A stretch of DNA of 64,000 nt from Styela clava. Its lineage: Eukaryota. Of this stretch, positions 33,721 through 54,322 are shown in pieces. Under the pieces are notes generated by a model. That model saw only the letters and a list, made by a program, of their open reading frames with translations. It did no database searches and was not told the origin of the DNA. The position numbers and the translations under genes were made by a program. How positions within the stretch are numbered: position 1 is the stretch's first letter; every line of letters starts with the position of its first letter. The stretch spans positions 8,928,001-8,992,000 of the forward strand of contig NC_135263.1 in the NCBI RefSeq assembly GCF_964204865.1, in the 5' to 3' direction.

Positions 33721-33769
33721 ATGGGAAACTTATTTTCCAAGAGTGGGAACTTCTCTCCCGGAAGAAATA
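33721..33769 (+). CDS. Putative first coding exon (N-myristoylation signal MGNLFSK) of the long multi-repeat thymosin isoform
   Basis: AACATGG start context. MGNLFSKSGNFSPGRN is followed by a consensus donor A|GTGAGT in phase 1, matching the phase of the 48433 and 49347 acceptors. Two ATTGG boxes and TTTATATAGA lie just upstream (33670-33694). Confidence 0.6.
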
Positions 33770-36700
33770 GTGAGTATACGTTTTATTTCTATTTACTTAT
33801 TTGATATTGAATTTGTACGTCGGTACAATCTTGAAAGTTGAATGGTTGCCAGCTTTTCAATATTCGTCACTCACATTGGTATTGGTCGTTTATCTGGTCT
33901 AACTCGGCCATGGTCATGCTAATAATCTAGGAGAATTTTTGTTGATCGGTCCATGCCATTTGTGCTAAAACTTGCTCAGTTTATGTGTGATGAAATGCCA
34001 CGTAGTTTCAAATCGTAAACGAACATGCAGTAAGCCTACTCCGTATAGTTGCGGTTGATCTTCATAGAATTATTATCAAAACATTTCGTGTTTCCCGGAT
34101 CTGTCTGATACTGTTGGAATTTATATATGGTTTGACGTAATGGAATCAAAATCGAAGAAAAGTTGGAGAGTTTGGAAGAAACAACGGTAATGTTTCGTTG
34201 CGTTGTTGTCGATCCCATTGAATGATCTAATCATCTAATGATTGGTTCCGATAATTGCCTCTGTTAGTTTTTGGGGGGACGATCATTATTTGAATATATT
34301 GCTGCATGGTTACTGCTGGGGAAGCTTAGGGTGTATTTCATCAAATAACGGGTGGAAAAATCATCCACAATCGGATATAAAGAACAGAATTCGTTTCTTT
34401 TATGGAACTGTAGAATAATTTCCAATGAGCACAGTGTCACTTTTGAGTTTTTTGTATTAGCCTGGAGTAGTGTAAGCACAAAATGTATTTCTCCGTCATC
34501 CCGTTCTTTCAGATGTACGGGAGAGCATCTTTGTCCCAAAAATTTATGCAAATGTAAATTTTGTCCATTTGAGGATCGCAGTGCAATGTCGAAAATGTGC
34601 CAAGCATGCTACTGTATTTCAGCATACGCGCGAGTATCCATTACACACTACCTGTTACAGTGTCGTGTAACTGGACGAATAACATCGCAGATAAATCGAT
34701 TTTTCGTGAAGACGTTCCTCTTTTTATGTACTATTCATACCTTAACATGGAAGGGCCCGATAGTATATTAACTCATGCAATTGCAACATGAAGGGATACC
34801 ATAAACCGACAAGGAAACACATAATTCGCACTCAAAACTTTTTTAAATTGTGCATCGTGTTTTCAAATCTTGGGATATCTAAGCTCAAGAAGAGTGTGGG
34901 TCAGCTCTTTCATGTCGTCGTAGGTTGGAACATTCATTAGTTTGCTACGCCGGTGCTTAGCAATGTGGAGAATGAGTCAAATATTTGTTTACAATTGATT
35001 GGTAAATTAATACGCTACACGAGTATGTGGTAACTGGCAATCATCTATGAAATATTGGTAGCGCTTTCGAGTGTCTGTTTTAGTACAGAAATGCCACTCA
35101 TGATGGTCAACTTACAATTCTTTCAACAATATTGTTGATTTATATATATATGCTGTACTGTCTAAATCTAAATTAGGGTTTTGATCACAAGTTGGATGAA
35201 AAAACCAAATTGCCAACCCCAACATTTTTACTTTGATTATTTAATCAAAATCGATCCTATTTGAAAGTAGTAAAATAGTAAAACGAAAGTTTTTTTATTC
35301 TAATATTCCTGAAAAATATTATATGCTATTAAAATGGTTGATATACGTGACACATAATAATCACAACATTGAATTTAACTTTTGAAATAATTGTGCTCGC
35401 TCATTTGACTTGAACACGATGAGCTGTTTGCTGATTATTTTATAAATGCTGTCAGCTTGTAGTTGCCGGTTGCGGCTTTGGTTCGCTGAGCGGGTGCGGA
35501 GAAATTTCTACTCGTTGCCAAAACTTCTGCAAGAATGTTAAGAATGTATCGGCGATTGCGTGTACCGCACAATAATGAAAAAATAATGAAAAATACGACG
35601 AACGTTCTTTAAGAGTTGCCTAACGAGCTGTAATGCGGCAGAAAACTCATAAACCGTAATAATAGTTATCTCTTACTTCTCTCTAGTCACTTCCGTAGTA
35701 TTTATTTGTTGTACAATATTTAAGTGAATTCAATGGATCATCGGATCTTCATTGGACTTTCAATAATCGGAATTATTTCAACTTCATTACACAAAATACA
35801 TGAAGTATTCTTTTGGCATATTTTGTTTTTTTAATTGAACGATTTTTATGACTGAACTTGTTACTGGTATACTTATCAACTGTAGCAGTACTCTTTGTAG
35901 AAGTTGAATTAGCTGCTTCGTAGTTGCTTTTAATATCGCTGACTTGGTTAGTACAAGTATATATACACGCGCTTAAAATTCTTGAGAACAAGTCAATTCC
36001 CCGATCTTCTTGTAATTTCGTGGTTCTGTGCATTCCCATGTTCGTGGCTTTATTAAAAAGCGTTGACAAACAGTATGGCGAAAACGAGTCACACGAGTTA
36101 GGAGACCTTTACAGATACATAATAAACTACAGGTACATATTGCAGAAAAACTTCACCATAAAACTAGTTGACTTGAATTTGTTGAAGGGGTGTTTTAAGA
36201 TGATTTAAATGTTCCAACTAATGGACCGAACTTTTATTACTTTTTAACATCTTATGCCTGTATTATCATTATAAATTTACCAGCAGACCAATAAAATATT
36301 TTCCTTGAATGACGGCTTTTAACTTGACCATCACAAGTAAAAGTAGCGTGCTGTCTTCTAACATTAATAATAGTGCGCAACTCTTTATCTCTTGTTCAAA
36401 AGAATATGAAAATAAATATTGATTCTTAAATTTGAATTAAAGTTGTAAAAAATAAAAATAAGATAAACGGATGATCATAACGTTCGAATCTAATTTTCAT
36501 CCGCGCTTCGATGTTTTTGTATATAGTTTAAAACGAACAAATATGTTACTTCAGCTTCATGCGAACAATAGATCTAAATCTAGTGCTCTCATTACACTGT
36601 TCATTGTATTTTGTTCATTCCTATCATATATACTTATTGGAAGACCGGCAACTTTTGCAACACAATTCGGTTACTGCCGAAAGGGGAGTGAAATACATGT

Positions 36701-38639
36701 GAATTGTCTATCTTCCGATTGAATTCCAAATCTTAAAATTGCCTTGTTCGATTGATTTTATGTGATTCTTTGATCAATCAGGCGCAAATGTAGCAATCAA
36801 CACTCTAAAAATGGCAATAAATCATATCAAGAGTTTATTAGTCTGTATTAGTGAACTGTGTGGTGTGGCTATCCCACAAAATACAAATAATATTTGTTTG
36901 TATACTCTCGTCATATACTGTGAACAAATTTATCAAATTCACTATGATTTAAAAATGAAACCGCATTTAAGCAGCATGCCACTTTATTATACCCACCCAA
37001 GTATGTTTGGTGTGTGATTGGTTGATAATGAGCGTGATCTATATGCACCTAACATTTAATTCCGATTACACCAATCTTACACAATTACTTGTGTTTGCCA
37101 GAGAAGTGAATAATTTTTTTTTACTGTAGTACGAGCGTATTTATTTTTTCACTACACGAAAACAACTCATCTTCTCACAGATAAATGCCGAGCATGGGAA
37201 TGAGCCATCGTAGCCCGAGGCGTAGATAGCGTGTTGACTGAAATAAATGGGATATTTGTTTCAAGTAAAGATAGTAATATTGTGCTCAGAAACGCTAAAC
37301 CACTTATTTTACTTCGTCTGTTGCTCTCTTTATTTGCGAATCGAACGTTGATAGCTGTATTGCGCTGTTAATAAAACACGATACATTTCGTTGTTTTTGG
37401 CAATATTAACCTGTGGCCACAGCAACGTCTTTTTCTTCTTGTAACATGACACACTGATATTGTAATCCCGTAATGTATGTAACTCCGAAAAAAGTAATAC
37501 TCTTAGCTTACCACAATGTCCAGTGTTACAGTAAAGGTTGTTTGTAAAACGCAATATTATTAATTCTTTTTTCTTGGAAACATCACCCCATGGTCCTACT
37601 TTCAGAAATTGCTCAATCCAAATGAAGTGGCATTATCGGGTTATAGCATAACATTCAGTGAATCGAATACGATTTTCTCCTCTATTATCCCTCAAAATTG
37701 TATGCAAATCGCCTAATTTATTTAGTCCATTTAGTCCTATGCTGTGATTATATGGTCTCGTTTTGATCAGATTTAAATAATGGTTCGAATCGCCGGGTCG
37801 TCTTGACAAGGTGGTTTATAGGGAGCGATGGGATTCAGTGGATTGGAATGACGTCTCTCGAGTCAAGTCACCGTTGATCCAGGTGCCCAGTTCAGTCGAG
37901 TTTAAACTCATCGGGCTAGTTTAGTTTTCTCAAAACTGGACCGCATCGATGTCGAATTTTAAAATGCGAGCGTGTAAATTACTTTTTAACTCTTTCTGCC
38001 CTGGACCGCGATATCGAAAAAACACTATATTCCTGGCGTTTTCGAACAAAATTCACAAACTTTAAAAAATTGTCAAAAGCTAACCATAGGCCCAATCCCT
38101 ACAGTTCTTGGTTTTTTTGAAAGGCAACTCCAAGCACAGCACCAGGAAACTAAGTTTTTCACACCTGTTCTAACAGCAAGCCAGTGGCATGGCTCAGCTT
38201 TGACACACTTTTTACGGCTCTCAAATTTCGTCCGAAATATGACTAAAATGACCACTTTCAAAGACAAAATACTCACACACAAACTATAAACACTACACAT
38301 ATCAAACTTACTCACAAGAAGGGTAGAGGTGTAACCTTATTGGGAAAATTTGCAGTTTTTCTCTAACTGACATGAAATTGTCATGGTAGGCTGATGAATT
38401 TCAGGTAAATGGCAGAAATTTTCGAAAAAATTGAAAATTTTGTTTTCGAAAAATCAGATATTTATATTTACATACGAGTAAAAAATGACACAAAAAAATT
38501 AAATTCAGTCAGTTTTGAAAGAATGTGAATAACAGTGGTGAAAAACAATGTGAAAAGAAAGTGTGCATACGAAATAATAATAGCGAAAATGAAGAATTAC
38601 ACAGTATGTACATAAAACACCTTGGTGCACGTAAAAAGA

Positions 38640-38720
38640 AAAATCAGTCTCTGACAAAGTCAACAAAAATCACAGTCTCTGGCAAAGACAACAAAAATCA
38701 CAGTCTCTGATAAAGTCAAC
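38640..38720. repeat. ~28-bp tandem repeat x3 inside the piggyBac element
   Basis: Unit approximately AAAATCACAGTCTCTGACAAAGTCAACA repeated three times with few substitutions. Confidence 0.8.
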
Positions 38721-38749
38721 ATCACAATATTGCACATAAGTTTTGATTC

Positions 38750-39282
38750 CTATTCCCAATAGTTTGGGAGGGTGTGAAACTTCTCGAAACACGGGGTAAC
38801 ACAAAGTGTTACCTGGCATTTCTCACACCAATATGAAGACCTTTTTTGTTTCAATTTTCTGCTACTGCCTTCTCTTTCTCTTTCTTTTTTGTCCCGTTCA
38901 GAACACACCCTGCAAACTCGTGATCGCCGAGGGCTCGAAGCTCCGAACATTCCGCCCGTTGACGCTGCTGCTTCAGCTGGTACATCTTCTGTGCTTGCAG
39001 CATAGCGCCTAGCCGGGACTGGGATAACCTCTTCATCGGAGCTAGATGACTCACTCGTCTCTTCCCACTCGTCACCAGAACTAAAAGAAAAATTGCGTTG
39101 ATTAACGACTGGATTATTACTAATAACAAGTCCAAGCTATGAGGCTTGCTCAAACAATTGCCACAGTCAGCTTACAAACTATCATTTTCTCAGAATATAA
39201 AGAAAATTTTTTTTAAAAAATAGCAGAAGAATGCATGCAGGTATTGCACTTACCTTGCATCAAAATCGCTCTCACTCTCCAT
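38750..39282 (-). CDS. Spliced 119-aa piggyBac-derived ORF: acidic N-terminus fused in frame to the Cys-rich domain, no DDD catalytic core
   Basis: Exon 39282-39254 (ATG..GCAAG|GTAAGT) plus exon 39080-38750 (TTTTCTTTTAG|) gives MESESDFDASSGDEWEETSESSSSDEEVIPVPARRYAASTEDVPAEAAASTGGMFGASSPRRSRVCRVCSERDKKEREREGSSRKLKQKRSSYWCEKCQVTLCVTPCFEKFHTLPNYWE with no internal stop. Confidence 0.6.
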
Positions 39283-40607
39283 TACGGTACCTTGTCTGAT
39301 TTATAGCTACCAGAATCCTAATAAACTTACAAATACGTCTTATATAACAATATCCCTTTAGAACCGAAATCAACTGCATAACAATAATAAAAAGACGACT
39401 CTCGTCCGCAGTCATAAACACTATCCCCTGTGTCGACGACAAATGAATAGTCCAAAGTCTACTCTGAAGTCTCAAAACAAAGAACGAATGTTCCCTAGCT
39501 ATTTTTGGTGGTTTACGAGCTTCAATTTTCAATGAACAAACATACAACTGCAGAGAAAAAAGCAGAAAAATATCAAAAAAGGGGAACACCCTTTAAATCG
39601 CCCAATACGCTCGAATGGTTCGAGCGATAGCTCATAATAACGGGCTCGAAACACACTAACGATTGATACCAAGATCGTATGCCTCGTGCCCGTTGAAGCG
39701 GAGATATGACGTCATATTTTACCCGCAATATACTGGGGTTCAGGTTGGGGGTGTTTCTCGCCATCCACATTATAGTGCGGCTCAGGGCGCAAAGAGTTAA
39801 ATATACTTGACGGTTTTCGAGTACTGATTAAAATTTCATCTTTATATGACATAAATTCTTGTTACCAGCGCAAAACAAAATGATCACAATTTTTTAGTTG
39901 CAGATTTCATATAATAACGATTCCGTTTACTTTGTTCTACTGTTACAGGTCCGTTGTCTTGTATCATGTATTGCATTTTGCCAAGAGTCATACGACCGGA
40001 ATTTACATTTTTAATATTTAATAATCCGCAGTTGGTATCTTTATATAGCATACGTATCACAAAAAAAATAGTATTTTTCTCATTTGGTACCGATCATTTA
40101 TCGACTTTGCACTGTTTATTCACCGACACCGGCGAAATTTAACAGAAAAAAAATTCGAAACTCAAAGCAGCTGTGCCCTTTCGAACACGAGTGTTAAGAG
40201 TTTAACATAAAATTTAGATGAAGTACAACCAACTCTCTTCGACTGCTAGAGGTTTTTAGACCGGTAACTTGCATTTTTTTAATGATGTGTATGATAAAGA
40301 TATATCTATCAATTTTTCTATCTTCCGCTAGATGGAGATATTAGGCAATAAAATTCGGAAGAAACGTCATTAAATGGGGATGTGTATTTCACGCCTCGGA
40401 ATCGCATAAGTTCACGTCGCAATGTGATGGCTATATTTAAATTAATTTGTTAGGGCAACTAACTAATTGTTCACCTAACTAGGATTTTGTGTATTGGTTC
40501 ACAAGATATGGCCAGAGTTTAAATGTTATTGCATTTACGTGCAACATGATTATTTATAATGACCCTTCACAATTATTTTCGTATTCCAAACGCGCATATG
40601 AATTTTA

Positions 40608-40812
40608 CGGTTCCATTACATTTGAACCCACGTACATTTGAACCCACGACGATTGCACCGGCATACTATTGCACCTCTGGATTTTTTTGTTGTTTTACGG
40701 ATATTTGAACCCATACTAACCCTAACCCATGGGTTTTGTACCCGCATATAGATTGGACCCGCGAATATACACATGGGTTCAAATGTACGTGGGTTCAAAT
40801 GTACGGTCACCG
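40608..40812. mobile_element. MITE family A, copy 3
   Basis: Same TIRs, TSD AATTTTA (40601-40607 / 40813-40819), internal CTAACCCTAACCC. Confidence 0.9.
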
Positions 40813-41995
40813 AATTTTACTACCAAACCGCCATTTTTGAGTCATCAGGTCTTAGTATAAGTTCGCAAGGATACAGATATACAAATATTATTACTTGCTT
40901 TTCGTCTTCAACGACTGTTTTATATTGGGCCCAATAACAAAGAATAAAACATGGACATATATTGGACGCACCGTTTATTCGTGAGAGGTATTGCCGACGC
41001 GAAATTCTTAGATGAAGTAAATTTCTATTCTAAAAAATTCTGAAATTCTAAAGGCTTGTAAATTGTAATACAGTACCAATATGACTCGCCTATATCAGTC
41101 AAAGTAAGGGAAGTGAGGTTTCAGATTGGACATCATCGATTATGACATTCACTTGTTCCCATTCATAAAGTGTTGTAAGACTTAGTATATATATATAGTC
41201 CCAATGTAGCCATGTAAAATAGTGGAGAGACTGACAATTGACTAACGTTCCTTCAAATGGCCAGTGACGATTTGTTTGCCCAGTTGGAAGACACTCCCAA
41301 TGAGTCAACGAACGTCGCGGGGTATGCCGATGTAGCATTTAACTATTTTTCATTAGGGACTAGTCAGAATAATATGATGGCGGCGCTTGGAACTGTGATT
41401 TACTCACATCCCATGTATGGTAATTGGTAATACATAACACATGTCGAAATGGGATATTCAGAAAAGCGGGAATATGCTTATTATACACGTTCTGTCAACG
41501 GATAATTTAACAGAAGCTCTGGATCGCAACAGCAATATTGAAAATCTTATCATTGTTTAAGGATTGGGACCCAACCAAGACATGTTAATGTCCAATGCCA
41601 GTGAATGAAGTTATTTCAAGTATGGTTTTAAATGTAGAAAGTGACGTGACCGCAGACTGTGGTCAGACCTAATTTCATTGTTAGTCGGTTACGCCGAACG
41701 GAGTACATGAAATTCAGAACTGCCTGTTCGCACTACTTCCAATCTCATGCACGTCGTTTATCTTTAATCTGTATCTGATTTAGGTAATTAAGTACAATCC
41801 AAACAATCAACATTTCATTTTATTTATTTTATATTCATGTAATGGCCACAATGATCAGAAAACTAATACTGAAAAAAATCACATTCTAAAAGCGTAAATG
41901 AAAAGTAATTGGTGCTACTAAGACTGAAAATTAGGTTCTCGCAGGTTATGGATTGTTTTTTGTGTGATTGTGTGTAGAAAGGTAAAGAAGGGAAA

Positions 41996-42232
41996 GGGTG
42001 CTCCCGAAGTATGCGAACCAAGATGGCGGACATCGGAACGTAACATGAGTTACAGGTTAGGGTTAGGCGATAATGTTTTTCCAATTTTCCTTATTTTAGT
42101 CCTATTATCAGTTCGAAGACTAGCCAAGGGCCTCCCGTACTATTTATACCTAAAATTATGGCCTAACCCTAACCTAGTACACATATTACATTCCGATGTC
42201 CGCCATCTTGGTTCGCATACTTCGGGAGCCCC
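41996..42232. mobile_element. MITE family B (long TIR, telomere-like internal motifs)
   Basis: ~40-bp TIR GCTCCCGAAGTATGCGAACCAAGATGGCGGACATCGGAA, internal GGTTAGGGTTAGG and CCTAACCCTAACC, ~7-bp TSD AGGGAAA/AAGGAAA. Confidence 0.88.
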
Positions 42233-45200
42233 AAGGAAAGTACTGTTATAACACGTTTGCGCATCTATTTCATGCCTACTTGACTGTTCTTATTGTAACT
42301 ATGTATGACATACTCAGTTGTCTGTGGCCTGAATTAGTTGTTTACATGGTGTTTTAACAGCTATTTTTCCATGCGCTTATACTGTAGTTAGAGAACACTT
42401 AGATTTGCATCGTCGGTTACGGTCAGTATTATGGATGTCCACGCTTTTCACTGAAGTATTTCGAGATGCAGTATGTATGCAAGAGAATGGTCATCACTAT
42501 CAGGCGTTTTATGGGACATCCCAACAGTTGAACTATTAGTCATTTCTGGAAAGTATTTTAACTAGCTGTTCTATGTTACATAGCAATGTGTAATTATACA
42601 GTATGACGCGCATGACATCGATCGGTCACATCCTATATTTCATTTATTCGATTGTTCTGTGAAAAAAAAATTTCGCTGTTTATTGAGAGTTTCTATTCAT
42701 AATTCTTCGCGGAGAGGTGAGCCGGTGTATGATGCGTTTCCTTCCAGGTTATGACATATTTTACTATTTTGTGGCACATCGGTCAGTGGGGAATCTTGCA
42801 AGTTTCAATTCATATATCAGTAATCGTTCCACGTCTAGTAGAAGGTTGAGGTCCCGAATAGGAATATATCAACTTAAATGGGTTTGCTGTGTCTTACTCT
42901 TACCGCCGATTCTTGTATTCTTATTTATTAATCAAGAAATTGTGCGTAATAAATTATTTCGGAACATTTATATTTATCATAGTGTAAATCTATTTCGTGT
43001 CTAACTGAAGCATCTGTATTTTCACCATTTTTGGACGTGACCGTATTTATTCTCCGTTGTTCCTTGTATGGCATAGATTCTCTCATACTGGTGACGTTTG
43101 TCTAAATTCCTAGACGGATACGACGCGTAGCGGGGACTCAAAGAGAAAGTTTTTATTACCATTTTCTTAACAACTCGTTGCTGGTGTAGTCCTACCAGAC
43201 GAAGACGAATTTATTGCTGAAGAGGATTATTAGAAATCCTCAATTTTATTAGGCGATTGTTAATTAAGCTACATTTTCGTGCAATGGTATAAGTCAACCG
43301 GACAAGTCTAGTTGCGAGAGCATCATTATGCTTACCTAGATTAACATTATTTCTGCATCACTCGTAATTAACGTCAACTGCAGGTCAGCGTAACTGATAG
43401 GAACGAATTGAAAACCATTCCAATGCTGATATAAATTGAAGGACTCTCGTAGGTTTAGTTTTAAAGCGTTCCAACGCTGTTTATAGTCTCCCTATAAAAA
43501 AAAGTTAATTTATTATTGATTTATTTTTCATTCTAGTGATACCGCGATGAAGTAGTCTGTTTCATGTGTACTATAGTCCCGTCTTATATTTGTGTATATA
43601 ATAATACAACCTCCTACGGGCTATAATATGCAGTGCATTTCCTGTGTAATGTGATCCGCTAACCGGATATGATGCACGAAATATTTTCAGCTGTCAAAAA
43701 TAACCATCAGATTGTCGTTTTTTATTAACTCATTGCAATAGGCTAATTTGAGAATCGATTTTAAAAAATTACTGTCTTGTTAGAAAGAGCTTTAGATCAT
43801 ATGAAGATCATATCCCAAACCTACTTGAGAGGAGCTTGCTGTAATTATCATTGTTTCGTTATTTCGATCTGGTCTGTCGTTAAGATTTTACAAAATATCT
43901 TCTACTCCAAGCTTAACCCTGCCATTAGATGGCTAATATTGTCAGCAAGAAGAAAGTTTTCTGAGCGTCATTACTTATTTCATGAGTTCATTTATGCTTC
44001 AGTGTACAATGTATACAGTGTTAATCGAAGCGAAGAAGGTCGAGTGATTCTGAATTGTATTAAAGTGGGTTCTTCTGAAAAGCGATCTCAAACAATTGTC
44101 GTAACTCGTAATTATAGGTTACTAACGTCACTGTCAAAAATATCCATCCACACGCATAAGTTGTTATGGTTTGACCAACGCCAAAAGTGGAACCGCAGTA
44201 ATAGATGGGTAATTAAAATTATATGTACAAAAATATTCATCGACTTCGGAGCCAAACATTGCGACTGTGTGTCGACTTGTTCTTCTTTGTTTGAAGTTTG
44301 TACTTTGGGCTAAAAACAATAAGACATCTCTTTTTTATGTCATGTTGAAATAATAGTTCAAATTGGTTTCACCTGTTTGTGAATCACAGATCTCATTTTC
44401 GGGTAGCTTCCTACAAACAAGATTTACAGGTGAAAATATATCAGTACAGTAAACTAAATCAACGATTTGTGTTATATTTCATAATCTCGATGTCAACAGC
44501 CTCCCTATTTATGACAATGAATCGGATAACTCGTCTACTTATGATGATAAAAATCGGTGACGTCATTATGTATGTTCGCAACTTTGTCAGCAACATTCGG
44601 TCAATACTGCCCCAACATCTATTTATTTGATTTGGCGGAGTCCGTGTGCTATTACTGGCTACCAATGTCCAATTCTCGTTTATGAAACGTCAAGCTTTTT
44701 CGAGAAAGTTTGTATAGTGATTGATATTTCTCAAACAAAGGATTTTGAGATATTGAACCGTCGATAACGTCATTTTCGGTAAATATCATTGGCTGTTGTG
44801 CCATTTGTTTGGATGATTTTATAGCATCGTGATTCGTTCTGGTTATAAATTCATAGGTTGAGGCCCCTTGTCATTTGTGTTAGCTTGTAGTGGAAACGTA
44901 ACCCAGTGCTTCATATATAGTGTTTGATTCTTTTTGATTCTATGTAGACCGCGCAAGGCGCGCAGTAGTAAGCTCTTGTAGTTATTTGGCCCAACTAAAT
45001 TATGTTCATTGTTGGGTGTTTTTCACCGCAAGTGAAGGACTATTCGATTTTCTTCCGATTTGTAGTTTTATTTTAACTCGGGGAAATATGTATTATTCAG
45101 CGAACTCGGTGTTCAGCTGTGGACTTATGGGTATCGATGTGCTACCTGCCATAAATGTGATCATTGCTTTTCACGTTTTTTTTTACATCAGATCAGAAGG

Positions 45201-48200
45201 TACTAAAATGTTAATGACAAATCAAATGGGTAAGGGAGAAAATATAGTATAATATTCAATGTCAAAACGGAATGGAATTCCAGAATGCGGATCGCTGTTG
45301 TGTGGGCATCCCGTTCATGAGTCTAATTTTTTTGTTACGAGCGAACGAGTTTTACGTATATACATCTCTTTCACTTTGCTATACTCAGTCCTATTTTTCT
45401 AAGAAACAGAAATGTGATATGTTTGTTTAACGATATTTACTGGAGATAAGATCGATACGCACCCCGAGGCACATGTGGATGCATGTCTGCTCTAAATATG
45501 TTGATTGTTGACATGAAAAGATCTTGAACGAAAATTTTGAGAACGTAAATAACCTATCGAGAGAGGATGATTGAAGGCTGACTGGTAGTTGTGAGGTGTA
45601 GCTAATTCACTTAAATATTTTGTTCGAAGATGTCGCTTTCTATACTTAACCGATGGTAGCTATATTGGGTGGCTGTGATGATCGCCGAATTACAACAAAT
45701 TGAAATAACGGAAAAGTGTCGCAGTTGGTTGAAAATTGATAGATGCCTCAAGTAGTTTGGGATTTGGCTTTTTGGGAAATATAAAAGCGTAACCATAATT
45801 CCAACCTAACGCTATTGTAAAGCTATTCGACAGTTGTTAATTACAGCTAAATTCTTTTATGCGGCCGAAATATACACTTTTATGTACAAATTCGGCGAAG
45901 TCAAAGGTAGATTAGTAAAACGAGCTGGGAACTCTTGAAGATTTATATTTTGTATTGTGATAATAAATACATGACGGGAAGTAATGTTTCAAAATGCGTG
46001 GGTATCGAGTTAAGCAAGATGATAACACCATCGTTCAGCTCTGTAAGAGCGGATGATCGTGATTATGTAATTTCCGAACCTATCGTCATGAAGAGCTTTG
46101 TCCGCTGCCCGCTGTTAAAACCAGCATCAATTTAATTCGTTTTCAGTGTAACATGCCATGATTCGTTACACAAGTCATAAGAATACGATTCGATTAGTAG
46201 CTTTCAATAAGTTCGTGCCCGACTTTGCAATTCGTTTGATTACTACTACTGATTTAATGATTGGTTAATACAGAAATGCAATTAATTGAGTTGCGTATTT
46301 TTAATTACATGTCTCTGATTTAAATGCGAAGCAATTAGACAATTATATGTTTAGATCAGTTTCAATCTCGGCAAGCAATGCGAATCGACTAATACGTGAG
46401 GATGTAATTGAAATGAAAGATTTCAGCTCGTCTTATCGTTATAACCCGGTGAGGATAGGATTGTATGGCTTTATCGTAAACAACTGATGAAAATGTCGAG
46501 AATTTAGCATTCAGTGCGAAATATTGCAGATATAGAGCACTTGTTTCTGACTGTCATGCTGTATTACTAATTATATATACTATAAATCTTAGGCTATGAA
46601 CCACAATTCGCGAGGGGTGGTAACCTTAGAACCGGTCACGCTTGGTGCTTAACATTGAATTGATTGGTAATAAGATTATTTTAGCACATTGGACCACAAA
46701 TATTTTATGTACACGCTTACGGTATTGTGGATGATAGGTATCTCTACCGGTCACCCATGTCAAATACTTCCAAAGCGTTATAAATTATTCCGATCAATAT
46801 GTTCTATATTGTAGATATTGGGTCAGCTAGATAGCATGTCGCACACATTGCATGTTTACTTCCAGCATATCTCTTCTTTCATAAAGCCATTAAGACCACG
46901 CCCTAGGTTTACGACCAAAAATGCGCGCGCTCTATTGACATACATGCTAGATATTAATATATTTCGTAGTAAGCTTATTCGCCGCAGTTTGCTCCAGGCG
47001 AACTTGTTATATGGTTTCATTCAGAAGCAACGCTTCTCGTGTTACTGCATAAGTATGGTGTGTCTTTCGAGCCGCGCATTCTTCTATGTTGTTCCAAATC
47101 CAGCGAAAACTGTATTCCGTTATTTCAGTATTTGCGAGAAGCTGTCGAATTATGAAGGCTGATAAGACTTATTATTTCATTTTTGCAGAACTTTCATTTG
47201 TTAGGTTGTTGTATTCTTCATCCCTCGTGAATGGTCTGGTGACTACCATATTATGTTGTTTTTTTGCTGTCAGAGTGGTTTTGAACAAACTTTAGACAAT
47301 TTTAGTGCGCGCCATTTGCCAGTCCGAATAGTTTCACTTCTGCTGGTTCCTATTTTCGATGCCTATGGCGACTAATATTTATATACATGAATACATTAAC
47401 AAGGTATGCTGCATACGAACCTGAAATTGGTGTTGCGAATGTCATCTAGAACCTAGAATGTGAAAACTTCTGATAGAACGAGTGATGTAGAATACGTACA
47501 CTGCATAGCCAGTTGGCCATAAACGACATTTACTGTTATTGCTTCAGTTCATAGAAATAGTATTAATAATACTATCTTATTAATAATAAATTTGACGTTT
47601 CTTTCATTAGAATACTTACGATAAAATGCGTTTATAACCCTCCAAATAATTCGCGTCCATGTGTTGTTAAAATTTATTGTTTTTGTAGTTATTTAAAGGA
47701 GGCTCCTCATTATTCCTTCGTATCTCGTCTTGTGGTTTCGTGTTGTCTGCGCGAAGGAGGCTGGCTTTACGGTAGCTGATTCAAGTAGGCAGGCAGGCAG
47801 GCATAAAAATAGCAATTTAAATTTGTTAGCTCAGAGGCAATCGAACGCAAAGCAGTAAAATTGCCATTACGTCGCTCTGAATGTATTTGTCGAGCGAACT
47901 GAGAGGAAATTGGATGTTATTCTAAATAGTCTTTCCCCGGTTAATCTGGACCGAGTGTGATCAATAGTAGAGAAGTGCTCTACATCTACCACTCGTGCTT
48001 GGGAATGTGTTAGTTGCAATCGACTAATTTAAATTTTTTGAACAAAGAACGTCTACAAGTACAGGCGTCCAATTAGTAATTTCAGATTCTTTGTTGTGCT
48101 CAACAAAATCTAGGTGGCCTCCTTATTTGTATTTTTATCGCTACTTGTAATATATTATAATTCTAGCGGTAGTACGTATGCATGCGAGATTCGTCGTTGT

Positions 48201-48432
48201 TAATCTTGGACCGATGATCAACCGTTTTCTATGAAATCTTTAAGCTAAAATAAAAAATTTTTTTGCATATACCAGATGTATTCACACATTCAAGATTTTA
48301 ACATCACAAAACCGCTTTGATCTTAAAATCAGATTGTTATATCACGTTTCGTTCATTATTCTAACGAAAATAACGATGTTTTTTCCTTTTCTTTCATATC
48401 TATTCGAACATAATAAACAAATCAATCAAAAG

Positions 48433-48528
48433 AAAGCGGCAAAAAGAATTCCAAGAAATCAAATAATTCATCTACGGATAAAGATCCTGTCTCAGGAGAA
48501 GATAAGAAAACAGAGCAAGAAAAACAAG
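48433..48528 (+). CDS. Putative 96-nt Lys/Ser-rich exon of the long thymosin isoform
   Basis: First AG after a CTAAC branch site (48361) and pyrimidine tract, donor CAAG|GTAAAA. Phase 1-1. Encodes (K)SGKKNSKKSNNSSTDKDPVSGEDKKTEQEKQ. Confidence 0.6.
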
Positions 48529-49346
48529 GTAAAATCAGCAGACTGTAAAATATACACTGACACTTTCACACCGCCCAATACCCTGCTTCTCTTGACACTC
48601 GATGATTCCGTCAGAAATCAAGCAGTGCCACAGATAATCAGCATACTGAATTGACATGATTTTTCGAACCGCAGGAAGGATTACTATTACTTTCATATTA
48701 TATGGAATTGTATATAATCACCTAAACAAAGCTTTTGAACAAGCAGTGGCTCAATTTAGATTTACATTGATTGAAATTATGAAATTTAATTAAGTTCAGT
48801 TTATTTCAGTTGAAACCGTTTGTAAAATTCAGCCCGAGGTTATTGCGCTCATTGCCGACATTTTTTTTGGAGCTAGCTGTTTACTCAGATATGTAATTTT
48901 GTCTTTAGTTTCGTATTAATCACCATTTGCGTTTTTGTCAGATCGGGTTTCCGTTTTGCTCGTATAATATTGAGGTATTGCTTTAAATTACCTAAGCGTG
49001 AAAATTGTCTCGAGTTGGTATTAGTTTTTTTGTGGTCTTAACTGTCTTGAGCTTATATGGGTTTTTGCATCTTGGTGCGGTCTGTAAGTGATAAATCGAC
49101 GGTTCGCTTTACGTTTGAGTGTTCTGATATTGTTAAGGTTATAGCCTTCGAATGTAATAAATAGTTAGCTACAGAATGTTTTGCCTCGCAGGTGAAACGC
49201 GACTCTGTGCAGTCGATCTAATGCGCGATATATTTTTGCCGGCCTCTGTGTGATGTGCTAGAGGTTATTTTCACTTGTTAGGGTTGTCACGCTCTATTTG
49301 ATTCCATCTTTTTCTCATGTCGTTCTGAATATTGACTTGTTTTTAG

Positions 49347-49636
49347 TTGTAGAAGAAGTACCCAAGGTAGAGGAGCAGCAAGCTACTACAAGCGAGGAAC
49401 CGATTGAACAGAAACAGGCAGAGTCGTCTTCAACTACTGAAGAGAAAAAGGAAGAGCCAAAGCAAGAAGCGGTCGTAGAAGTAGCGAAAAAAGAAGAACC
49501 GGCACAACAGGCAGAGGAAACGAAAGCCGAAGAACCAGCTAAATCAGAACAAACACAAGAGGAAGCAAAGCCGGAAGTTGCCGAAGCAAAACCGGAAGAA
49601 GAGAAAGAAGTTACACAAGAAGAATCAGCACAAGAA
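49347..49636 (+). CDS. Glu/Lys/Ala/Pro-rich disordered exon of the long thymosin isoform
   Basis: Acceptor TTTTTAG|, donor GAA|GTGAGT in phase 0, in frame with the acceptor at 50772. Purine-rich coding bias: VEEVPKVEEQQATTSEEPIEQKQAESSSTTEEKKEEPKQEAVVEVAKKEEPAQQAEETKAEEPAKSEQTQEEAKPEVAEAKPEEEKEVTQEESAQE. Confidence 0.82.
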
Positions 49637-50624
49637 GTGAGTATTGAATTATAGAGACATATCATTGCTAAGAATCATCAAATATTCACAAGTAAATTAT
49701 ACGCTTTTACCTCGAATCTCCGCTTCAAAAGTTCAGTTTTGTTTAACTCGTGCTAGCTTGATGACTATTTTTATGATTTGTAGCATGAACATGGGACAGA
49801 CTAGCGTATTTCAATTTTCCGAACTCGGAGATATATACGGTATATATAAGTGTATTCCACATCCTGGTATTCATTACATCAAATAACATTGTCTTTCGCA
49901 AACAACGCATCCCGATTCACCTTTATTGCTATGTATTTTTGAGAGACCTCCATTGTTTATTTATTAAAATGCCGTACGATAAGGCGATTTGAACATCTCA
50001 TATTCGTGTTAGCGCGGTTAGGTATGTGTCCAGTTTCACCAAACCTATTTACTAATGAAGCCTGGCCTGCAGTAGGCCCTACATGACAACGAAGGCATCT
50101 GCTGATATTTTATTATCCATCGTTTTGGATTTTTCAATTTTGATCTCGGCGGCTAAGAACTCCATGGATAAATCGAATTCAAACTGCCCGCTGTATTCGC
50201 GATACATGCTTAGTAGGATTGAGATCCACTTTTTTGTAGATTTCGTTCGTAATTAATTTTTTGTAGATTTCGTTCGTGTTTGCACTAGTTCACTCACGCA
50301 TAGCTGTCAGCAATATGGAATGTGCGATTTGCTTATTCAGTTTACCATTTGTGTATTTTATGTCTAAATTCTTGGACTGTGCTTTGAACGCGCGTGGACT
50401 TGTATATTCGCACAGTAGGAGGTGAATAAGTTGTAAATTGTGCTATTTGCTTTAGAAGATATTCCAGGTATAATTTCTGTAACGGTATTAAACGAATTTG
50501 AACTACTTTTCAAATTCATAAGTCTAAGACCAAGTTGTAATTACATCACTAATGATGTTCTTATGTAGTCGGATTGTATTACACCAGCATTCTAGAAACA
50601 CTGGGCAAGGTACAAAAATTCACT

Positions 50625-50724
50625 TATAAAACTTTATCAAAGAGATTGGACATTATATTTCCGACTTGCCTTTACTCTTCAATAACCGATAATGCACAGA
50701 CGAGTTCAGACGGACTTACAAGAA
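50625..50724 (+). promoter_or_regulatory. Putative internal promoter and non-coding first exon for the short thymosin isoform
   Basis: TATAAAA at 50625-50631, donor CAAGAA|GTGAGT at 50724, 47-nt intron to the acceptor at 50771, ATG at 50784 (GTCATGT). Confidence 0.4.
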
Positions 50725-50771
50725 GTGAGTGTATTTAGTTTTTTATCTTAAATTACGCGCTTTTTTTATAG

Positions 50772-53700
50772 GAACAACCAGTCATGTCGAAACCAGATGT
50801 ATCAGCCGTTATGGATTTTGATAAAACCAAATTGAAACAAGTAACAACCGAGGAAAAGACTGACGCCAAATCACGTAAGTATTTCACCTATTTTCTGTCA
50901 ACGAAAAGAAATATCCTTAGTTCATTAATTGAATTCAGCTATGGATGATAGGAAAAATGAATCTGGGTGATACCGACAGAAACGCGATTCGAATTTTTCT
51001 CAAACGCGATCTATTTTTTCACAGAATATCTTGAAGAAAAATCGCGAGAGCAGGCCGCTTCATTTGACCACAGCAAGCTGAAACAAGTAGAAACACAAGA
51101 CAAATCTGTGTTACCAACAGCACAAGGTATCTTATAAAATCTTTGACCTGACGATTTTTTGAACCAGACTTTATCTTTGACTCTTGAGAACAATGCAGTC
51201 AGTATTGTGGTCAATAATCACTCGTCTATCAGTTTTATGTCTTAATAATTCAAGGATTGATTTCATCCGATTTAAATCTAAGAATTTCAAAAATCAGCCA
51301 CGTTGGTGATCGAAGGGGCTTTGTTCTGAGAGAACGCGACAAGCATCTCATGAAATGTTCAAAATAGTTTTGCCTTAGCTTGTAACTCATTAAACTTTCA
51401 AAACCAAATTCCCTTGCAAAGTTAATTTTGTTCGGTAATTTATGACTTTTATATTATGTTTGCGTATCACACTGTACTAGTATTTGAACGATATACTGTC
51501 GACCTTCCCCACCTGGAAACAGAAATTAGTTTCGTCAACAAATCGCTGGCAGATTGGAGTAAAAACGCATTAAATTATCTTAATTTTCACTGTAAATGAA
51601 AAATTTGCTAGTTACTGTGGCGAGATTACTCAAATATTTGCTATTTATTAACAATTGCAGAAATGAATATCTGTGGTTTGGTATATAGTAACTGAATACT
51701 GTAAATAACAAAATTTGATCCTCGAGGCAAAACGATCAAACTCGTTTATATTATTGTTCCTAGCTGTATACTAATTGTGATACTTCTGTTAAGACATTGT
51801 TCACGAAAAAGCACCACAGCAAGCTGCCAGTTTCGAAAAAGAGAAACTCCACCATGTTGAAACTGTGGAGAAGGTGGCTATGCCTACTGCCCAGGGTATC
51901 TATGTTAAATTATTTTGATATTCGGAAATTCTTGACATTGTGCGTTCATAATAGTTTCATTGTCATAATAACGAATTTCATCTTTTTCTTGCAATTATAT
52001 ATTTTTTCAAATGTATTAAATGTAATTATTGGCATTGGTAATACAATCAATTTCATATTTTAGATTTCAAAAATTTATGATGAAGAAATATAAATCACAC
52101 TATTGTAATATAATATATATATATTAGATTACGCTTTTCGTATATATTTGTACCCAAAGTTTTTAAAGTATGTCGACTTATCATACATAATTAAGATGCT
52201 TTTTAATCTATAATCTATTATTTGTCAAAAATAATGACCATATATTGAGCTTCCTAATTACTAACTTTATAACTGACAAAAGTATTTTTATTATATTAGA
52301 AATAGCTCAAGAAAAAGCGCCACAGCAAGCTGCCAACTTCAAAAGGGAAGAGCTTAAGCACGTTGAAACAGCAGAAAAAGTAGCATTGCCAACTACCCAA
52401 GGTAATAAATATATTGTGCTACTCTTATTTTACAAACATTATCCCAAAAAAATTGTTTCGGGCACTTTGTTAGCTAGCTATAAACTTATCTATATTGTAG
52501 ACTATATTTGATTTTTCCGAGTCATAAGAGTAAGATAGGAAAACTATTCTAGAATTTTTTCTATCCCTACTTTCATCTCCGATTTCAATTATTGTAAATC
52601 CATTTAAGCATATAAATAATTGGGAAAGGAATAACATAACTCAGGATTGATGAAAGAATTATAATTTCGAAACACCTATCAATTTCATTATTACCGTTAT
52701 TCTGATTTTCATGCATTTTCGTTCATGAAAGACTGACTAAATATTTTGAATGTGTTTGACAGATATTCTCCATGAAAAGACACCACAGGAGGCTGCTAAT
52801 TTCGACCAAGATCAACTAAAACACGTTGATCCAGTGGAAAAGCACTCCTTGCCGTCACAGGAGGGTAAATAAAATTACTTCCATCTATCGCTGATCATAT
52901 TAGCCAAATTTGATAAGTTTTCTTCTTCTTAGTGTTTTCTTCGCCGACAGGGTAATACTTTGATAGTATACAGTATACACTCAGCCTAAATTACTAAACA
53001 TTTAATAAGTGTCGTTCGTGTTTGACTGAAATTTTATTTAATCTATAGACGCCAACATGTCATTCCAGATGCATGTCCATAGTGTATGTATAACTAAACT
53101 ATTTTCCACTAAATTTCATTTATATTTGTGTATAAACCCAAAATATATTAATCCACATCTGAAGCGCTTTTGGGCGGTCATACAAATTCAATGATAACTG
53201 ACTCCGATGACCGCGTGGTCGTCGTATCGTTGCCACCCACTCTGTACCGAGAACTATTTGCTTTCGAATATATTTTGTTGTGTTCATGTTTTCCGCTTGA
53301 CAAAACATATAAAATCTCATTTGCATGATTCAAACCGACCATCTACTCGATAGAGAAAGTCGACTGGCCCCTTCCATCCGCTTCTGACCAGTGGTTAGAT
53401 CCTTAACTGTTATTTTTCCCAATGTAGATATAGCGGCAGAAAAGACTATTCAAAACATATCCCTCTTCCGCAAAGAATCTCTAAACAAAGTTGACGTAGA
53501 AGAGAAAAACACTTTGCCAACCAAGGAAAGTGAGTAACATATCAAATTATATATATTGTGTTTTGTATTTTGTAATGGCAAACAAGTTCTAGTAGATTCC
53601 GGTATCAGCACCATCGGTAGTAACTTGCTTATGTCACCTCGAAAAATGAGAGGCCCTATCGGTGTAAGATTTTCAACTAAAAAGAGCGTAGAATCAAACA

Positions 53701-54322
53701 AAAAGACAAAGCGCTAATTAAAAGAGGGTGCGGGAGTTTTATAGCCACGGGCCTCCAGAAGTATGCGCACCAAGATGGCGCACAACCTGAACATAGTATG
53801 TGTGTGTGTGTGTGTGTGTGTGTATCGGCTAGGATTCAGGTTGTGCGACATTTTGGTGCGCATACTTCTGGAGCACCGAATGATTAATTAGCTACCGTCA
53901 TAGCGAAACCCCACAATTCGAATTTACGCCTCCCAACAATAAAAGCGAAGTGCGAATGTGTGGGGGTTTGGTGCAGACACTATTCATCACAAAATTCTTG
54001 ATCTTTTTCCTGGAGCTAGCTACGTCGTTGGTTCCAAACTAAAACCGACGGAACTCCTCCAGAAATCATAGTAATAATAAAATATGGATTTGACTGAATA
54101 GGTCACTGATCCCGACTGTCGAAAAACTTTGATGTAAATATCTAAACGTAGGAAAAAAATGCTGTTGAATAAATTTGCTTCACAAAATAATCATTCAGTA
54201 TTCAATTGAATATAAACAAATCTGTATATATTCTAGTGTAGATATGTCGTAATTTTTGCATCTCATTGCTGTAACAAATACATTATTTTCCAGCCATTGA
54301 CCAGGAGAAAGCTGAAGCCTGA
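50772..54322 (+). CDS. Six-repeat beta-thymosin (WH2) protein; 209 aa from Met 50784, 358 aa with the upstream exons
   Basis: Exons 50772-50874, 51025-51126, 51794-51895, 52300-52401, 52763-52864, 53428-53529, 54294-54322, all GT-AG and phase 1. Protein MSKPDVSAVMDFDKTKLKQVTTEEKTDAKS/QYLEEKSREQAASFDHSKLKQVETQDKSVLPTAQ/DIVHEKAPQQAASFEKEKLHHVETVEKVAMPTAQ/EIAQEKAPQQAANFKREELKHVETAEKVALPTTQ/DILHEKTPQEAANFDQDQLKHVDPVEKHSLPSQE/DIAAEKTIQNISLFRKESLNKVDVEEKNTLPTKE/TIDQEKAEA. Confidence 0.93.
53748..53878. mobile_element. MITE related to family B with internal (TG)n microsatellite
   Basis: TIR CTCCAGAAGTATGCGCACCAAGATGGCGCACAACCTGAA...TTCAGGTTGTGCGACATTTTGGTGCGCATACTTCTGGAG, similar to the TIR at 41996. 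Lies in the last thymosin intron. Confidence 0.82.

What the first reader, a model, noticed from the sequence alone, without database searches (positions are those of the whole stretch)
33721..54322. Putative myristoylated BASP1/GAP-43-like acidic protein fused to six beta-thymosin repeats: a membrane-tethered multi-actin-binding protein
Seen: exons 33721-33769, 48433-48528, 49347-49636 and 50772 onward join with canonical GT-AG sites and matching phases (1,1,0,1...) into one 358-aa ORF with no stop. It reads MGNLFSKSGNFSPGRN-KSGKKNSKK-about 120 aa of E/K/A/P-rich disorder-6 thymosin repeats. None of this is visible in the ORF track, and the first exon is 14.7 kb upstream. Established: MGxxxSK is the N-myristoyltransferase consensus. 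Myristate plus a basic cluster plus an acidic disordered body is the architecture of BASP1/CAP-23 and MARCKS-type cortical actin regulators. Beta-thymosins, including multi-repeat ciboulot, tetrathymosin and actobindin, are normally soluble G-actin binders. Inference: this locus makes a lipid-anchored thymosin that holds several actin monomers at the membrane on a long flexible tether. I am not aware of that combination being described.
Basis: partly seen in the sequence, partly recalled or inferred. Interest (0 to 1): 0.88.

Follow-up and report, generated by a model that had tools for sequence, protein, structure and literature searches.

The report
Six-repeat thymosin gene, unproven lipid-anchor extension
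A sea-squirt (Styela clava) gene for an actin-binding protein with six beta-thymosin repeats is certainly there. The three upstream exons that would add a fatty-acid membrane anchor and a long acidic tether are a coherent prediction from sequence, but I could not confirm it with RNA or with relatives.

Summary
The sequence observation holds. Ten exons with GT-AG borders and phases 1,1,0,1... join into a 358-aa open frame. It reads MGNLFSK, then a basic patch, then about 118 acidic residues with no aromatic residue, then six beta-thymosin repeats, each over Pfam's cut-off.

The genome is Styela clava. Multimeric beta-thymosins are already known in ascidians, so the repeat gene is an ordinary new member of a known kind.

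The novel claim rests on splicing, and I could not test that. The acidic exon has no relative in 1.84 billion protein representatives.

Sequence evidence for the upstream exons:
- Exon 3 is non-repetitive and open in one sense frame only.
- It has no ATG, so it needs an upstream start exon.
- It ends in GTGAGT 17 nt before its frame closes (chance about 1.4%).
- Its phase fits only exon 4.
- MGNLFSK is the only MGxxx[ST][KR] start in the 25.7 kb upstream of exon 2.

Evidence against:
- No known protein holds exon 3.
- Exon 4 has its own thymosin-type start (MSKPD).
- A TATAAAA box and a small candidate exon lie just upstream of exon 4.

My odds: thymosin gene real, over 0.95; acidic exons spliced onto it, about 0.45; full lipid-anchored model, about 0.27. 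No BASP1, GAP-43 or MARCKS homology was found, only a resemblance in composition.

The parts
33721..33769 (+). Candidate exon 1: ATG plus 16 codons plus 1 nt (MGNLFSKSGNFSPGRN), then donor GTGAGT. The start context is A at -3 and G at +4.
   Evidence: It is the only MGxxx[ST][KR] start in the 25.7 kb upstream of exon 2. It matches PS00008. It is single copy in the genome. No RNA evidence.
48433..48528 (+). Candidate exon 2: 96 nt, phase 1 to 1. It encodes the basic cluster KSGKKNSKK and then a Ser/Asp/Lys-rich stretch. It has no ATG.
   Evidence: The acceptor AG is the first AG after a polypyrimidine tract about 30-55 nt upstream (read). The donor GTAAAA scores 6.2 bits. Single copy. No Pfam hit.
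49347..49636 (+). Candidate exon 3: 290 nt, phase 1 to 0. It encodes 96 whole codons of E/K/A/Q/P-rich acidic sequence with no ATG. Acceptor ttgacttgtttttag; donor GTGAGT.
   Evidence: It is the only E/K-rich open frame in the window. One sense frame is open. G is 54% at codon position 1 and 1% at position 2. It is unique in the genome. There were no hits in 1.84 billion representatives.
50772..50874 (+). Exon 4: a 3' splice site, then 12 nt (EQPV), then ATG at 50784 (MSKPD...), a start like that of thymosin beta-4. This is thymosin repeat 1.
   Evidence: Pfam PF01290 31.2 bits.
51025..53529 (+). Five 102-nt phase 1-1 cassette exons (51025-51126, 51794-51895, 52300-52401, 52763-52864, 53428-53529), which are thymosin repeats 2-6. 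Their actin-binding motifs read LKQVET, LHHVET, LKHVET, LKHVDP and LNKVDV.
   Evidence: (25.7-37.8 bits, all over the 24.8 cut-off). The nearest solved chains are ciboulot 3u9z_C, thymosin beta-9 and thymosin beta-4.
54294..54322 (+). Terminal coding exon (..TIDQEKAEA, then stop). AATAAA lies at 54326.
50625..50724 (+). Candidate proximal promoter and 5' exon of a short isoform. TATAAAA is at 50625. An in-frame ATG at 50692 reads MHRRVQTDLQE. A GTGAGT donor at 50725 lies 47 nt before the exon-4 acceptor.
   Evidence: The donor scores 8.2 bits. It shares the 13-mer ACAAGAAGTGAGT with the exon-3 donor, and these are the only two copies in the window. Prediction only.

Best explanation
The locus is the multimeric (six-repeat) beta-thymosin gene of the ascidian Styela clava. 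The repeats sit on 102-nt phase-1 cassette exons, so they can be skipped without breaking the frame. The default product is a soluble protein of about 210 aa that binds actin monomers and starts at ATG 50784.

Exon 4 opens with a 3' splice site 12 nt before that ATG, so something upstream must be joined there. The best-fitting partner is the donor of exon 3. Exons 2 and 3 look like real coding exons: they have no start codon of their own, and their only in-frame continuation is exon 4.

I therefore read the locus as having alternative 5' ends. One is a short soluble hexathymosin. The other is a long isoform that adds a tail of about 148 aa. That tail most likely begins with the MGNLFSK exon. 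If so, it would be N-myristoylated and held on acidic membranes by the neighbouring KSGKKNSKK cluster. The thymosin repeats would then hang about 118 disordered acidic residues away from the membrane.

Shown: the thymosin repeats, the exon structure, and the sequence motifs.
Inferred: every splice between exons 1-4, the myristoylation, the membrane binding, and the number of actins bound.

The confidence of 0.45 is for 'acidic exons are spliced onto the thymosin gene'. The full model with the lipid-anchor exon is about 0.27. The thymosin gene itself is above 0.95.
For: - Ten GT-AG exons give a 358-aa frame.
- There are six PF01290 hits over the cut-off.
- Exon 3 is open in 1 of 3 sense frames and in 2% of shuffles, with strong three-base periodicity. 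It is not a tandem repeat and is unique in the genome.
- A strong donor lies within 18 nt of the end of the frame, p about 0.0135.
- No Met occurs between residues 1 and 150, so exons 2-3 can be translated only from an upstream ATG exon.
- Only exon 4 among the thymosin exons starts in phase 0, matching the end of exon 3.
- The only gene found downstream is a carboxylesterase-family gene on the opposite strand, so the donor has no other same-strand partner before about 57 kb.
- MGNLFSK is the only MGxxx[ST][KR] start upstream, and it sits before a good phase-1 donor.
- Exons 1 and 2 are single copy.
Against:
- The acidic exon has no hit among 1.84 billion cluster representatives. NCBI's Styela clava proteins are in that collection (ERCC1 control at 100% identity), so no annotated protein appears to hold exon 3.
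- That negative is weakened. A plainly real 79-aa di-thymosin gene in the same window was also not found in the collection.
- Exon 4 has its own thymosin-type start, and a TATAAAA box plus a small 5' exon lie just upstream.
- Ascidians add spliced leaders at 3' splice sites (PMC1488885), so the exon-4 acceptor does not need exon 3.
- Frame compatibility between exons 3 and 4 is only a 1-in-3 coincidence.
- The exon-2 acceptor lacks an adjacent pyrimidine tract.
- Other phase-1 donors could feed exon 2.
Confidence: 0.45

Rival explanations
1. Only the hexathymosin gene is real. The three upstream 'exons' are not coding exons. They would be an open, purine-rich stretch plus splice-like signals that a reader could chain together, or at most non-coding 5' leader exons.
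For: - Nothing in 1.84 billion representatives resembles exon 3, although annotated Styela clava proteins are in the collection.
- No Pfam family hits exons 2 or 3.
- Four other stop-to-stop frames of 130 or more codons occur on this strand of the window.
- The thymosin gene is complete without the upstream exons: ATG 50784, and a candidate TATA box and 5' exon.
Against: - The joint coincidence is small. It needs one open frame only (2% of shuffles), a strong donor at the end of the frame (about 1.4%), the right phase for exon 4 (1 in 3), and the only consensus myristoylation start upstream in the matching phase.
- Exon 3 is complex sequence and not a decayed repeat.
- The database negative is weak, because the real di-thymosin neighbour is missing too.
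Confidence: 0.38
2. Exons 1-3 are a separate small gene for a myristoylated, BASP1-like acidic protein of about 150 aa. If the exon-3 donor is not used, the frame ends 5 codons later (..VSIEL, stop at 49652-49654). The thymosin gene downstream has its own 5' end, and the fusion is a modelling artefact.
For: - Read-through of the donor closes the frame at once.
- ATTAAA lies at 49963.
- Ascidian neighbours are known to be mis-fused by gene predictors (PMC2760879).
- The thymosin gene has its own start and a candidate promoter.
Against: - A consensus GTGAGT exactly at the end of the frame would then be a coincidence of about 1.4%.
- A 150-aa protein of this kind would also have been detectable, and it was not found.
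- Ciona operon genes abut with under 100 bp between them (PMC2760879), whereas the gap here is 1.1 kb.
Confidence: 0.12
3. The acidic exons are joined to the thymosin exons, but the transcript starts elsewhere, so there is no lipid anchor. This is a sub-case of the best explanation's 0.45, not an addition to it. Candidate starts are the ATGs before the strong phase-1 donor at 45230, or the phase-1 exons of the upstream di-thymosin gene (donors after 21886 and 22302). The di-thymosin route would give an eight-repeat thymosin with an internal acidic spacer.
For: - Nine ATG/donor pairs (about five distinct donors) in the 25.7 kb upstream score at least as well as exon 1's donor, which scores only 6.3 bits. 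The donor at 45230 scores 8.5.
- All thymosin exons of both genes end in phase 1, like the start of exon 2.
Against: - Only 33721 combines a good start context, a consensus myristoylation motif and a basic cluster straight after the junction.
- The di-thymosin gene has its own terminal exon and stop.
- The alternative first exons at 45088-45226 encode hydrophobic or trivial peptides.
Confidence: 0.18

Closest known systems
Multimeric beta-thymosins: Drosophila ciboulot (3 repeats), C. elegans tetrathymosin (4), Hermissenda Csp24/29 (4/5), Ciona multimeric beta-thymosin (5), termite HsjCib and silkworm BmTHY
   Same: They are tandem PF01290 repeats with one repeat per cassette exon. The exon borders fall inside the repeat, so skipping an exon keeps the frame (PMC2896938; PMC4608725). 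The nearest solved chain to repeat 2 is ciboulot 3u9z_C.
   Different: This gene has six repeats of 34 residues on 102-nt exons, against 38 residues on 114-nt exons in insects. None of the papers I read describes an N-terminal lipid anchor or an acidic extension of more than 100 aa.
BASP1 / CAP-23 / NAP-22
   Same: The predicted N-terminus has Gly2 in a myristoylation consensus with Ser6-Lys7, then a basic Ser-containing cluster, then a long acidic body rich in E/K/A/P with no aromatic residue. BASP1 needs its N-terminal myristate for function (PMC9379585) and regulates cortical actin (PMC7494789).
   Different: No sequence homology was found. Pfam gave no hit on exons 2 or 3 even at E<=1, and the representative library gave none. 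BASP1 has no actin-binding repeats of its own. The resemblance is in composition and architecture only.
Other membrane-targeted actin regulators: MARCKS; WH2 proteins such as Spire, MIM and N-WASP; N-myristoylated FMNL formins (from my own knowledge)
   Same: The principle is the same: a membrane-binding module is linked to a module that binds actin monomers or filaments.
   Different: None of them is a beta-thymosin. Here the predicted link is a disordered acidic tether, with no folded regulatory domain.
Ciona 'Thymosin beta-related' (KH.C2.140)
   Same: It is an ascidian thymosin-family gene. It is used as a marker of epidermal and papilla sensory neurons (PMC1481523; 10.1101/319327; PMC10497037).
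   Different: I could not test whether it is the orthologue of this gene or of the neighbouring di-thymosin gene. I could not obtain its protein sequence with these tools.

Membership tests
Beta-thymosin (Pfam PF01290) | Match to the Thymosin profile over the gathering score | tested here: met
   Exons 4-9 score 31.2, 37.8, 25.7, 28.9, 26.0 and 28.8 bits against a cut-off of 24.8. The whole-genome scan finds PF01290 only in this window.
Beta-thymosin (Pfam PF01290) | Central LKKTET-type actin-binding motif | tested here: met
   The motifs LKQVTT, LKQVET, LHHVET, LKHVET, LKHVDP and LNKVDV start at residues 166, 198, 232, 266, 300 and 334. The last two are the most divergent.
Multimeric beta-thymosin (ciboulot / tetrathymosin type) | Two or more repeats in one polypeptide, on frame-neutral cassette exons | tested here: met
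   Six repeats, five of them on 102-nt phase 1-1 exons with GT-AG borders. This is at sequence level; no RNA was available.
Multimeric beta-thymosin (ciboulot / tetrathymosin type) | Binds G-actin | not tested
   No binding test was run. I did not use complex prediction, because it would not bear on the question in dispute, which is the splicing.
BASP1 (Pfam PF05466) | Sequence homology to the BASP1 family | tested here: not met
   No Pfam family at E<=1 for exon 2 or exon 3, searched separately. No relative in the representative library. The joined model was not searched.
BASP1 (Pfam PF05466) | N-terminal myristoylation consensus followed by a basic cluster and an acidic disordered body | tested here: met
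   PS00008 matches at Gly2. Residues 1-30 are net +7. Residues 31-148 are net -23 with no F/W/Y/C. This holds only if exons 1-3 are joined as modelled.
GAP-43 / neuromodulin | Palmitoylated Cys3/Cys4 and a calmodulin-binding IQ motif | tested here: not met
   The model has no cysteine at all. No Neuromodulin Pfam hit.
MARCKS (Pfam PF02063) | Myristoylated N-terminus plus a central Phe/Ser/Lys effector domain, with a profile match | tested here: not met
   No Pfam hit. The basic cluster lies directly after the N-terminus and holds no Phe.
N-myristoylated proteins | Myristate actually attached to Gly2 | not testable with these tools
   Only the consensus could be checked. It needs metabolic labelling or mass spectrometry.
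Ascidian SL-resolved operon (Ciona type) | Same-strand genes less than 100 bp apart | tested here: not met
   The end of the exon-3 frame (49654) and the exon-4 acceptor (50771) are 1.1 kb apart. The criterion is from PMC2760879.

The most novel reading that the evidence does not exclude
Styela clava makes, from a distal promoter, an N-myristoylated beta-thymosin targeted to membranes by a polybasic cluster. Six actin-monomer-binding repeats would be held at the inner face of the membrane on an acidic, BASP1-like disordered tether of about 118 residues. A soluble hexathymosin would come from the same gene. This would be the first lipid-anchored member of the beta-thymosin family. In a sister group of vertebrates, it would combine two functions in one polypeptide that vertebrates divide between BASP1/GAP-43-type proteins and thymosin beta.
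Probability: 0.27. Interest if true: 0.72.

Novelty: new variant of a known kind. Interest (0 to 1): 0.45.

Why it matters
Beta-thymosins are textbook soluble buffers of actin monomers. A version pinned to the membrane by myristate and a basic patch would put a store or shuttle of actin monomers exactly where filaments grow. It would also give a natural experiment on how tether length and charge tune delivery.

If the long isoform is real, tunicates are the closest relatives of vertebrates and a Ciona thymosin-family gene marks sensory neurons. The isoform could then bear on where the vertebrate growth-cone proteins BASP1 and GAP-43 got their architecture.

If it is not real, the locus is an ordinary multimeric thymosin gene. 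The case then shows how easily acidic open frames can be chained onto a neighbouring gene.

Tried and rejected
Read laying needs run ids from that tool, so it was not used. The tool named no place as human-like. Before the second decline I had already sent the exon-3 translation to two search tools.

Only single exons or single open frames were sent, by reference. The joined translation was computed only inside scripts, to check frames and composition.

3. Relatives of the acidic exon. phmmer against 1.84 billion representatives gave 0 hits.

4. Relatives of the thymosin repeats.
   - The 106-aa open frame round exon 7 gave no hit. The length window of 58-185 aa excludes a 210- or 358-aa product.
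   - The 101-aa open frame round exon B of the di-thymosin gave no hit.
   - So I could not retrieve the annotated Styela clava thymosin protein or any tunicate orthologue.

5. Reaching NCBI's gene table through a neighbour with the look-up of encoding contigs. The only neighbour within 10 kb is a carboxylesterase-family gene of about 560 aa. Its largest exon (209 aa) cannot bring up a protein of that length, so I dropped this route.

6. ESM Atlas with repeat 2. It gave only generic thymosin clusters and no usable ids.

7. Spliced leader. The 16-nt Ciona leader, typed from my own memory, plus GT occurs only twice with one mismatch in this genome. That is no more than the control. It tells nothing about trans-splicing at exon 4.

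8. Literature. I found no paper describing a myristoylated or otherwise membrane-anchored beta-thymosin, and none describing a tunicate BASP1.

9. Rejected ideas.
   - Exon 3 as a decayed GAA microsatellite: TRF finds only a 12-nt unit of 2.4 copies.
   - Exons 1 and 2 as parts of a repeat family: both are single copy.
   - A Ciona-type operon: the gap is 1.1 kb.
Full report
WHAT IS IN THE SEQUENCE

Ten exons on the + strand join into one open frame of 358 codons plus a stop:
- 33721-33769
- 48433-48528
- 49347-49636
- 50772-50874
- 51025-51126
- 51794-51895
- 52300-52401
- 52763-52864
- 53428-53529
- 54294-54322

Every intron begins GT and ends AG. The exon start phases are 0,1,1,0,1,1,1,1,1,1.

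The predicted protein has these parts:
- Residues 1-30 are basic (net +7) and start MGNLFSK.
- Residues 31-148 are acidic (net -23; E 36, K 16, Q 14, A 12) with no F, W, Y or C.
- Residues 149-358 hold six thymosin repeats.
- Met occurs only at residues 1, 150, 159 and 243.

THE SOLID PART

Each of exons 4-9, searched on its own, passes Pfam's gathering score for Thymosin PF01290 (25.7-37.8 bits against a cut-off of 24.8). The LKKTET-type motifs are present in all six repeats and drift in the last two. The nearest solved chains to repeat 2 are ciboulot, thymosin beta-9 and thymosin beta-4.

Five of the repeat exons are exactly 102 nt and phase 1-1. It also parallels the 114-nt cassette exons of termite HsjCib and silkworm BmTHY, where exon skipping makes isoforms with fewer repeats (PMC2896938; PMC4608725).

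THE ORGANISM

Earlier follow-up notes of this scan name the genome as Styela clava. I checked this. An intronless ERCC1 frame from another contig of the same assembly is 100% identical to NCBI's 'ERCC-1-like [Styela clava]'.

A five-repeat 'multimeric beta-thymosin' is already known from the ascidian Ciona (text of PMC2896938). A Ciona 'Thymosin beta-related' gene (KH.C2.140) is a standard marker of epidermal and papilla sensory neurons (PMC1481523; 10.1101/319327; PMC10497037). The six-repeat gene as such is therefore a new member of a known kind.

THE DISPUTED PART: ARE EXONS 1-3 REAL, AND ARE THEY JOINED TO EXON 4?

What follows therefore rests on the sequence itself and on database negatives.

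In favour:
- Exon 3 lies in the only E/K-rich open frame of the window.
- It is open in one of three sense frames, while only 2% of shuffles with the same composition are open. G is 54% at codon position 1 and 1% at position 2.
- It is not a tandem repeat and is unique in the 377-Mb assembly.
- Its frame closes 17 nt after a consensus GTGAGT donor. Donors that strong occur 48 times in 64 kb on this strand, so the chance of one in the last 18 nt is about 1.4%.
- Exons 2 and 3 hold no ATG, so they can be translated only from an upstream start exon that ends in phase 1.
- Exon 3 ends in phase 0. Only exon 4 among the thymosin exons starts in phase 0, with four open codons (EQPV) before its ATG.
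- The only gene found beyond the thymosin stop is a carboxylesterase-family gene on the other strand, at 57.6-61.7 kb. The exon-3 donor therefore has no other same-strand coding partner.
- For exon 1, I listed all 631 ATG...GT phase-1 combinations in the 25.7 kb upstream of exon 2. Nine have a donor at least as good (about five distinct donors). Only the ATG at 33721 reads MGxxx[ST][KR].
- That ATG has A at -3 and G at +4, and the basic cluster follows straight after the junction.
- Exons 1 and 2 with their flanks are single copy.

Against:
- The acidic exon has no hit at E<=0.001 among 1.84 billion cluster representatives. The ERCC1 control shows that annotated Styela clava proteins are in that collection. 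So no annotated protein of this species seems to contain exon 3, either fused or stand-alone.
- That negative is weakened. A plainly real small gene in the same window (see below) was also not found in its length range.
- Exon 4 carries a start like that of thymosin beta-4 (MSKPD..., ATG 50784).
- About 150 nt upstream of exon 4 there is a TATAAAA box (50625). It is followed by an in-frame ATG (50692, MHRRVQTDLQE) and a GTGAGT donor (50725), 47 nt before the exon-4 acceptor. That would be a proximal promoter with a small first exon.
- About half of Ciona genes receive a spliced leader at a 3' splice site (PMC1488885), so the exon-4 acceptor needs no cis partner at all.
- Ascidian neighbours are known to be mis-fused by gene predictors (PMC2760879). 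However, Ciona operon genes abut within 100 bp, and here the gap is 1.1 kb.
- The exon-2 acceptor has no adjacent pyrimidine tract. Its AG is, though, the first AG after a tract 30-55 nt upstream.
- If the exon-3 donor is ignored, the frame stops five codons later. That would give a stand-alone acidic protein of about 150 aa.

WEIGHING

| Claim | My odds |
|---|---|
| The thymosin gene is real | above 0.95 |
| Exon 3 is a real coding exon | about 0.58 |
| The acidic exons are spliced onto exon 4 | about 0.45 |
| The full model starting at MGNLFSK | about 0.27 |
| The upstream exons are not coding | about 0.38 |
| A separate small BASP1-like gene | about 0.12 |

HOW IT WOULD WORK IF THE LONG FORM EXISTS (INFERENCE)

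1. Gly2 sits in the PROSITE PS00008 context with Ser6 and Lys7. This is the kind of site used by N-myristoyltransferase.
2. Myristate alone binds membranes weakly. The adjacent RNKSGKKNSKK cluster would add electrostatic binding to acidic lipids, as in BASP1, MARCKS and Src. This is established knowledge; for BASP1's dependence on myristate see PMC9379585.
3. The Ser residues inside the basic cluster are plausible sites for a phosphorylation switch.
4. The acidic body with no aromatic residue would be disordered and repelled by the membrane, so it would hold the six repeats away from it.
5. How many actins are bound cannot be read from the repeat number. From my own knowledge, not tested here: three-repeat ciboulot binds one actin, and tetrathymosin's repeats differ in function.

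COMPARISON WITH KNOWN FAMILIES

Membership in the beta-thymosin family, and in its multimeric class, is met. Membership in BASP1, GAP-43 or MARCKS is not. There is no Pfam hit on exons 2 or 3 even at E<=1, no cysteine for GAP-43-type palmitoylation, and no central Phe/Ser/Lys effector domain. The likeness to BASP1 is architectural only.

In the literature searches I found no report of a lipid-anchored beta-thymosin. If the full model is real, it is a new variant of a known kind.

STEPS LEFT OUT ON INSTRUCTION

The joined 358-aa model was not given to any search, fold or look-up tool. Exons were searched one by one, by reference. No reads were laid.

OTHER THINGS SEEN

- A second, smaller thymosin gene lies 28 kb upstream on the same strand. 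It has three exons (21784-21886, 22198-22302, 22599-22630), encodes 79 aa with two repeats, and has TATATAT at 21710.
- The two strong donors at 49637 and 50725 share a 13-mer that occurs nowhere else in the window.
- Intron 9 holds a (TG)12.5 tract between 44-nt inverted repeats.

Noticed in passing
window 21710-22630 (+): A second, complete thymosin gene lies 28 kb upstream. It has three GT-AG exons (21784-21886, 22198-22302, 22599-22630) that encode a 79-aa protein with two thymosin-like repeats. TATATAT lies 74 nt before the ATG. It and the six-repeat gene hold the only PF01290 matches found in the whole assembly. It was not found in the protein collection, so it may be unannotated.
   Followed up: partly
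window 50625-50771 (+): A candidate proximal promoter and mini first exon for the hexathymosin gene. TATAAAA is at 50625, an in-frame ATG at 50692 (MHRRVQTDLQE) and a GTGAGT donor at 50725, leaving an intron of only 47 nt before exon 4. If used, it would add 15 residues in front of MSKPD.
   Followed up: partly
window 49630-49642 and 50718-50730 (+): The exon-3 donor and the proximal candidate donor share the 13-mer ACAAGAAGTGAGT. These are its only two copies in the window, and both exons end in the codons for Gln-Glu in phase 0. The similarity does not extend further. Unexplained: it could be chance, a shared splicing signal, or a small duplication.
   Followed up: partly
window 53748-53878 (+), inside intron 9: A (TG)12.5 microsatellite sits between 44-nt inverted repeats that are 91% complementary. 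This is a hairpin-forming, MITE-like insert.
   Followed up: no
window 57579-61710 (-): A carboxylesterase-family gene (PF00135) lies on the opposite strand. It has an N-terminal signal-like exon (61710-61270) and a hydrophobic stretch near its 3' end, so it may be a membrane-bound cholinesterase or neuroligin-like protein.
   Followed up: partly
I did not examine it. It would be an ordinary occupant of a large intron or intergenic stretch.
   Followed up: no
G000 whole genome: The 16-nt Ciona spliced leader, typed from my own memory, followed by GT has no exact copy in this assembly. It has only two one-mismatch hits, which is no more than the control. Either Styela uses a different leader or my recalled sequence is wrong.
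   Followed up: no
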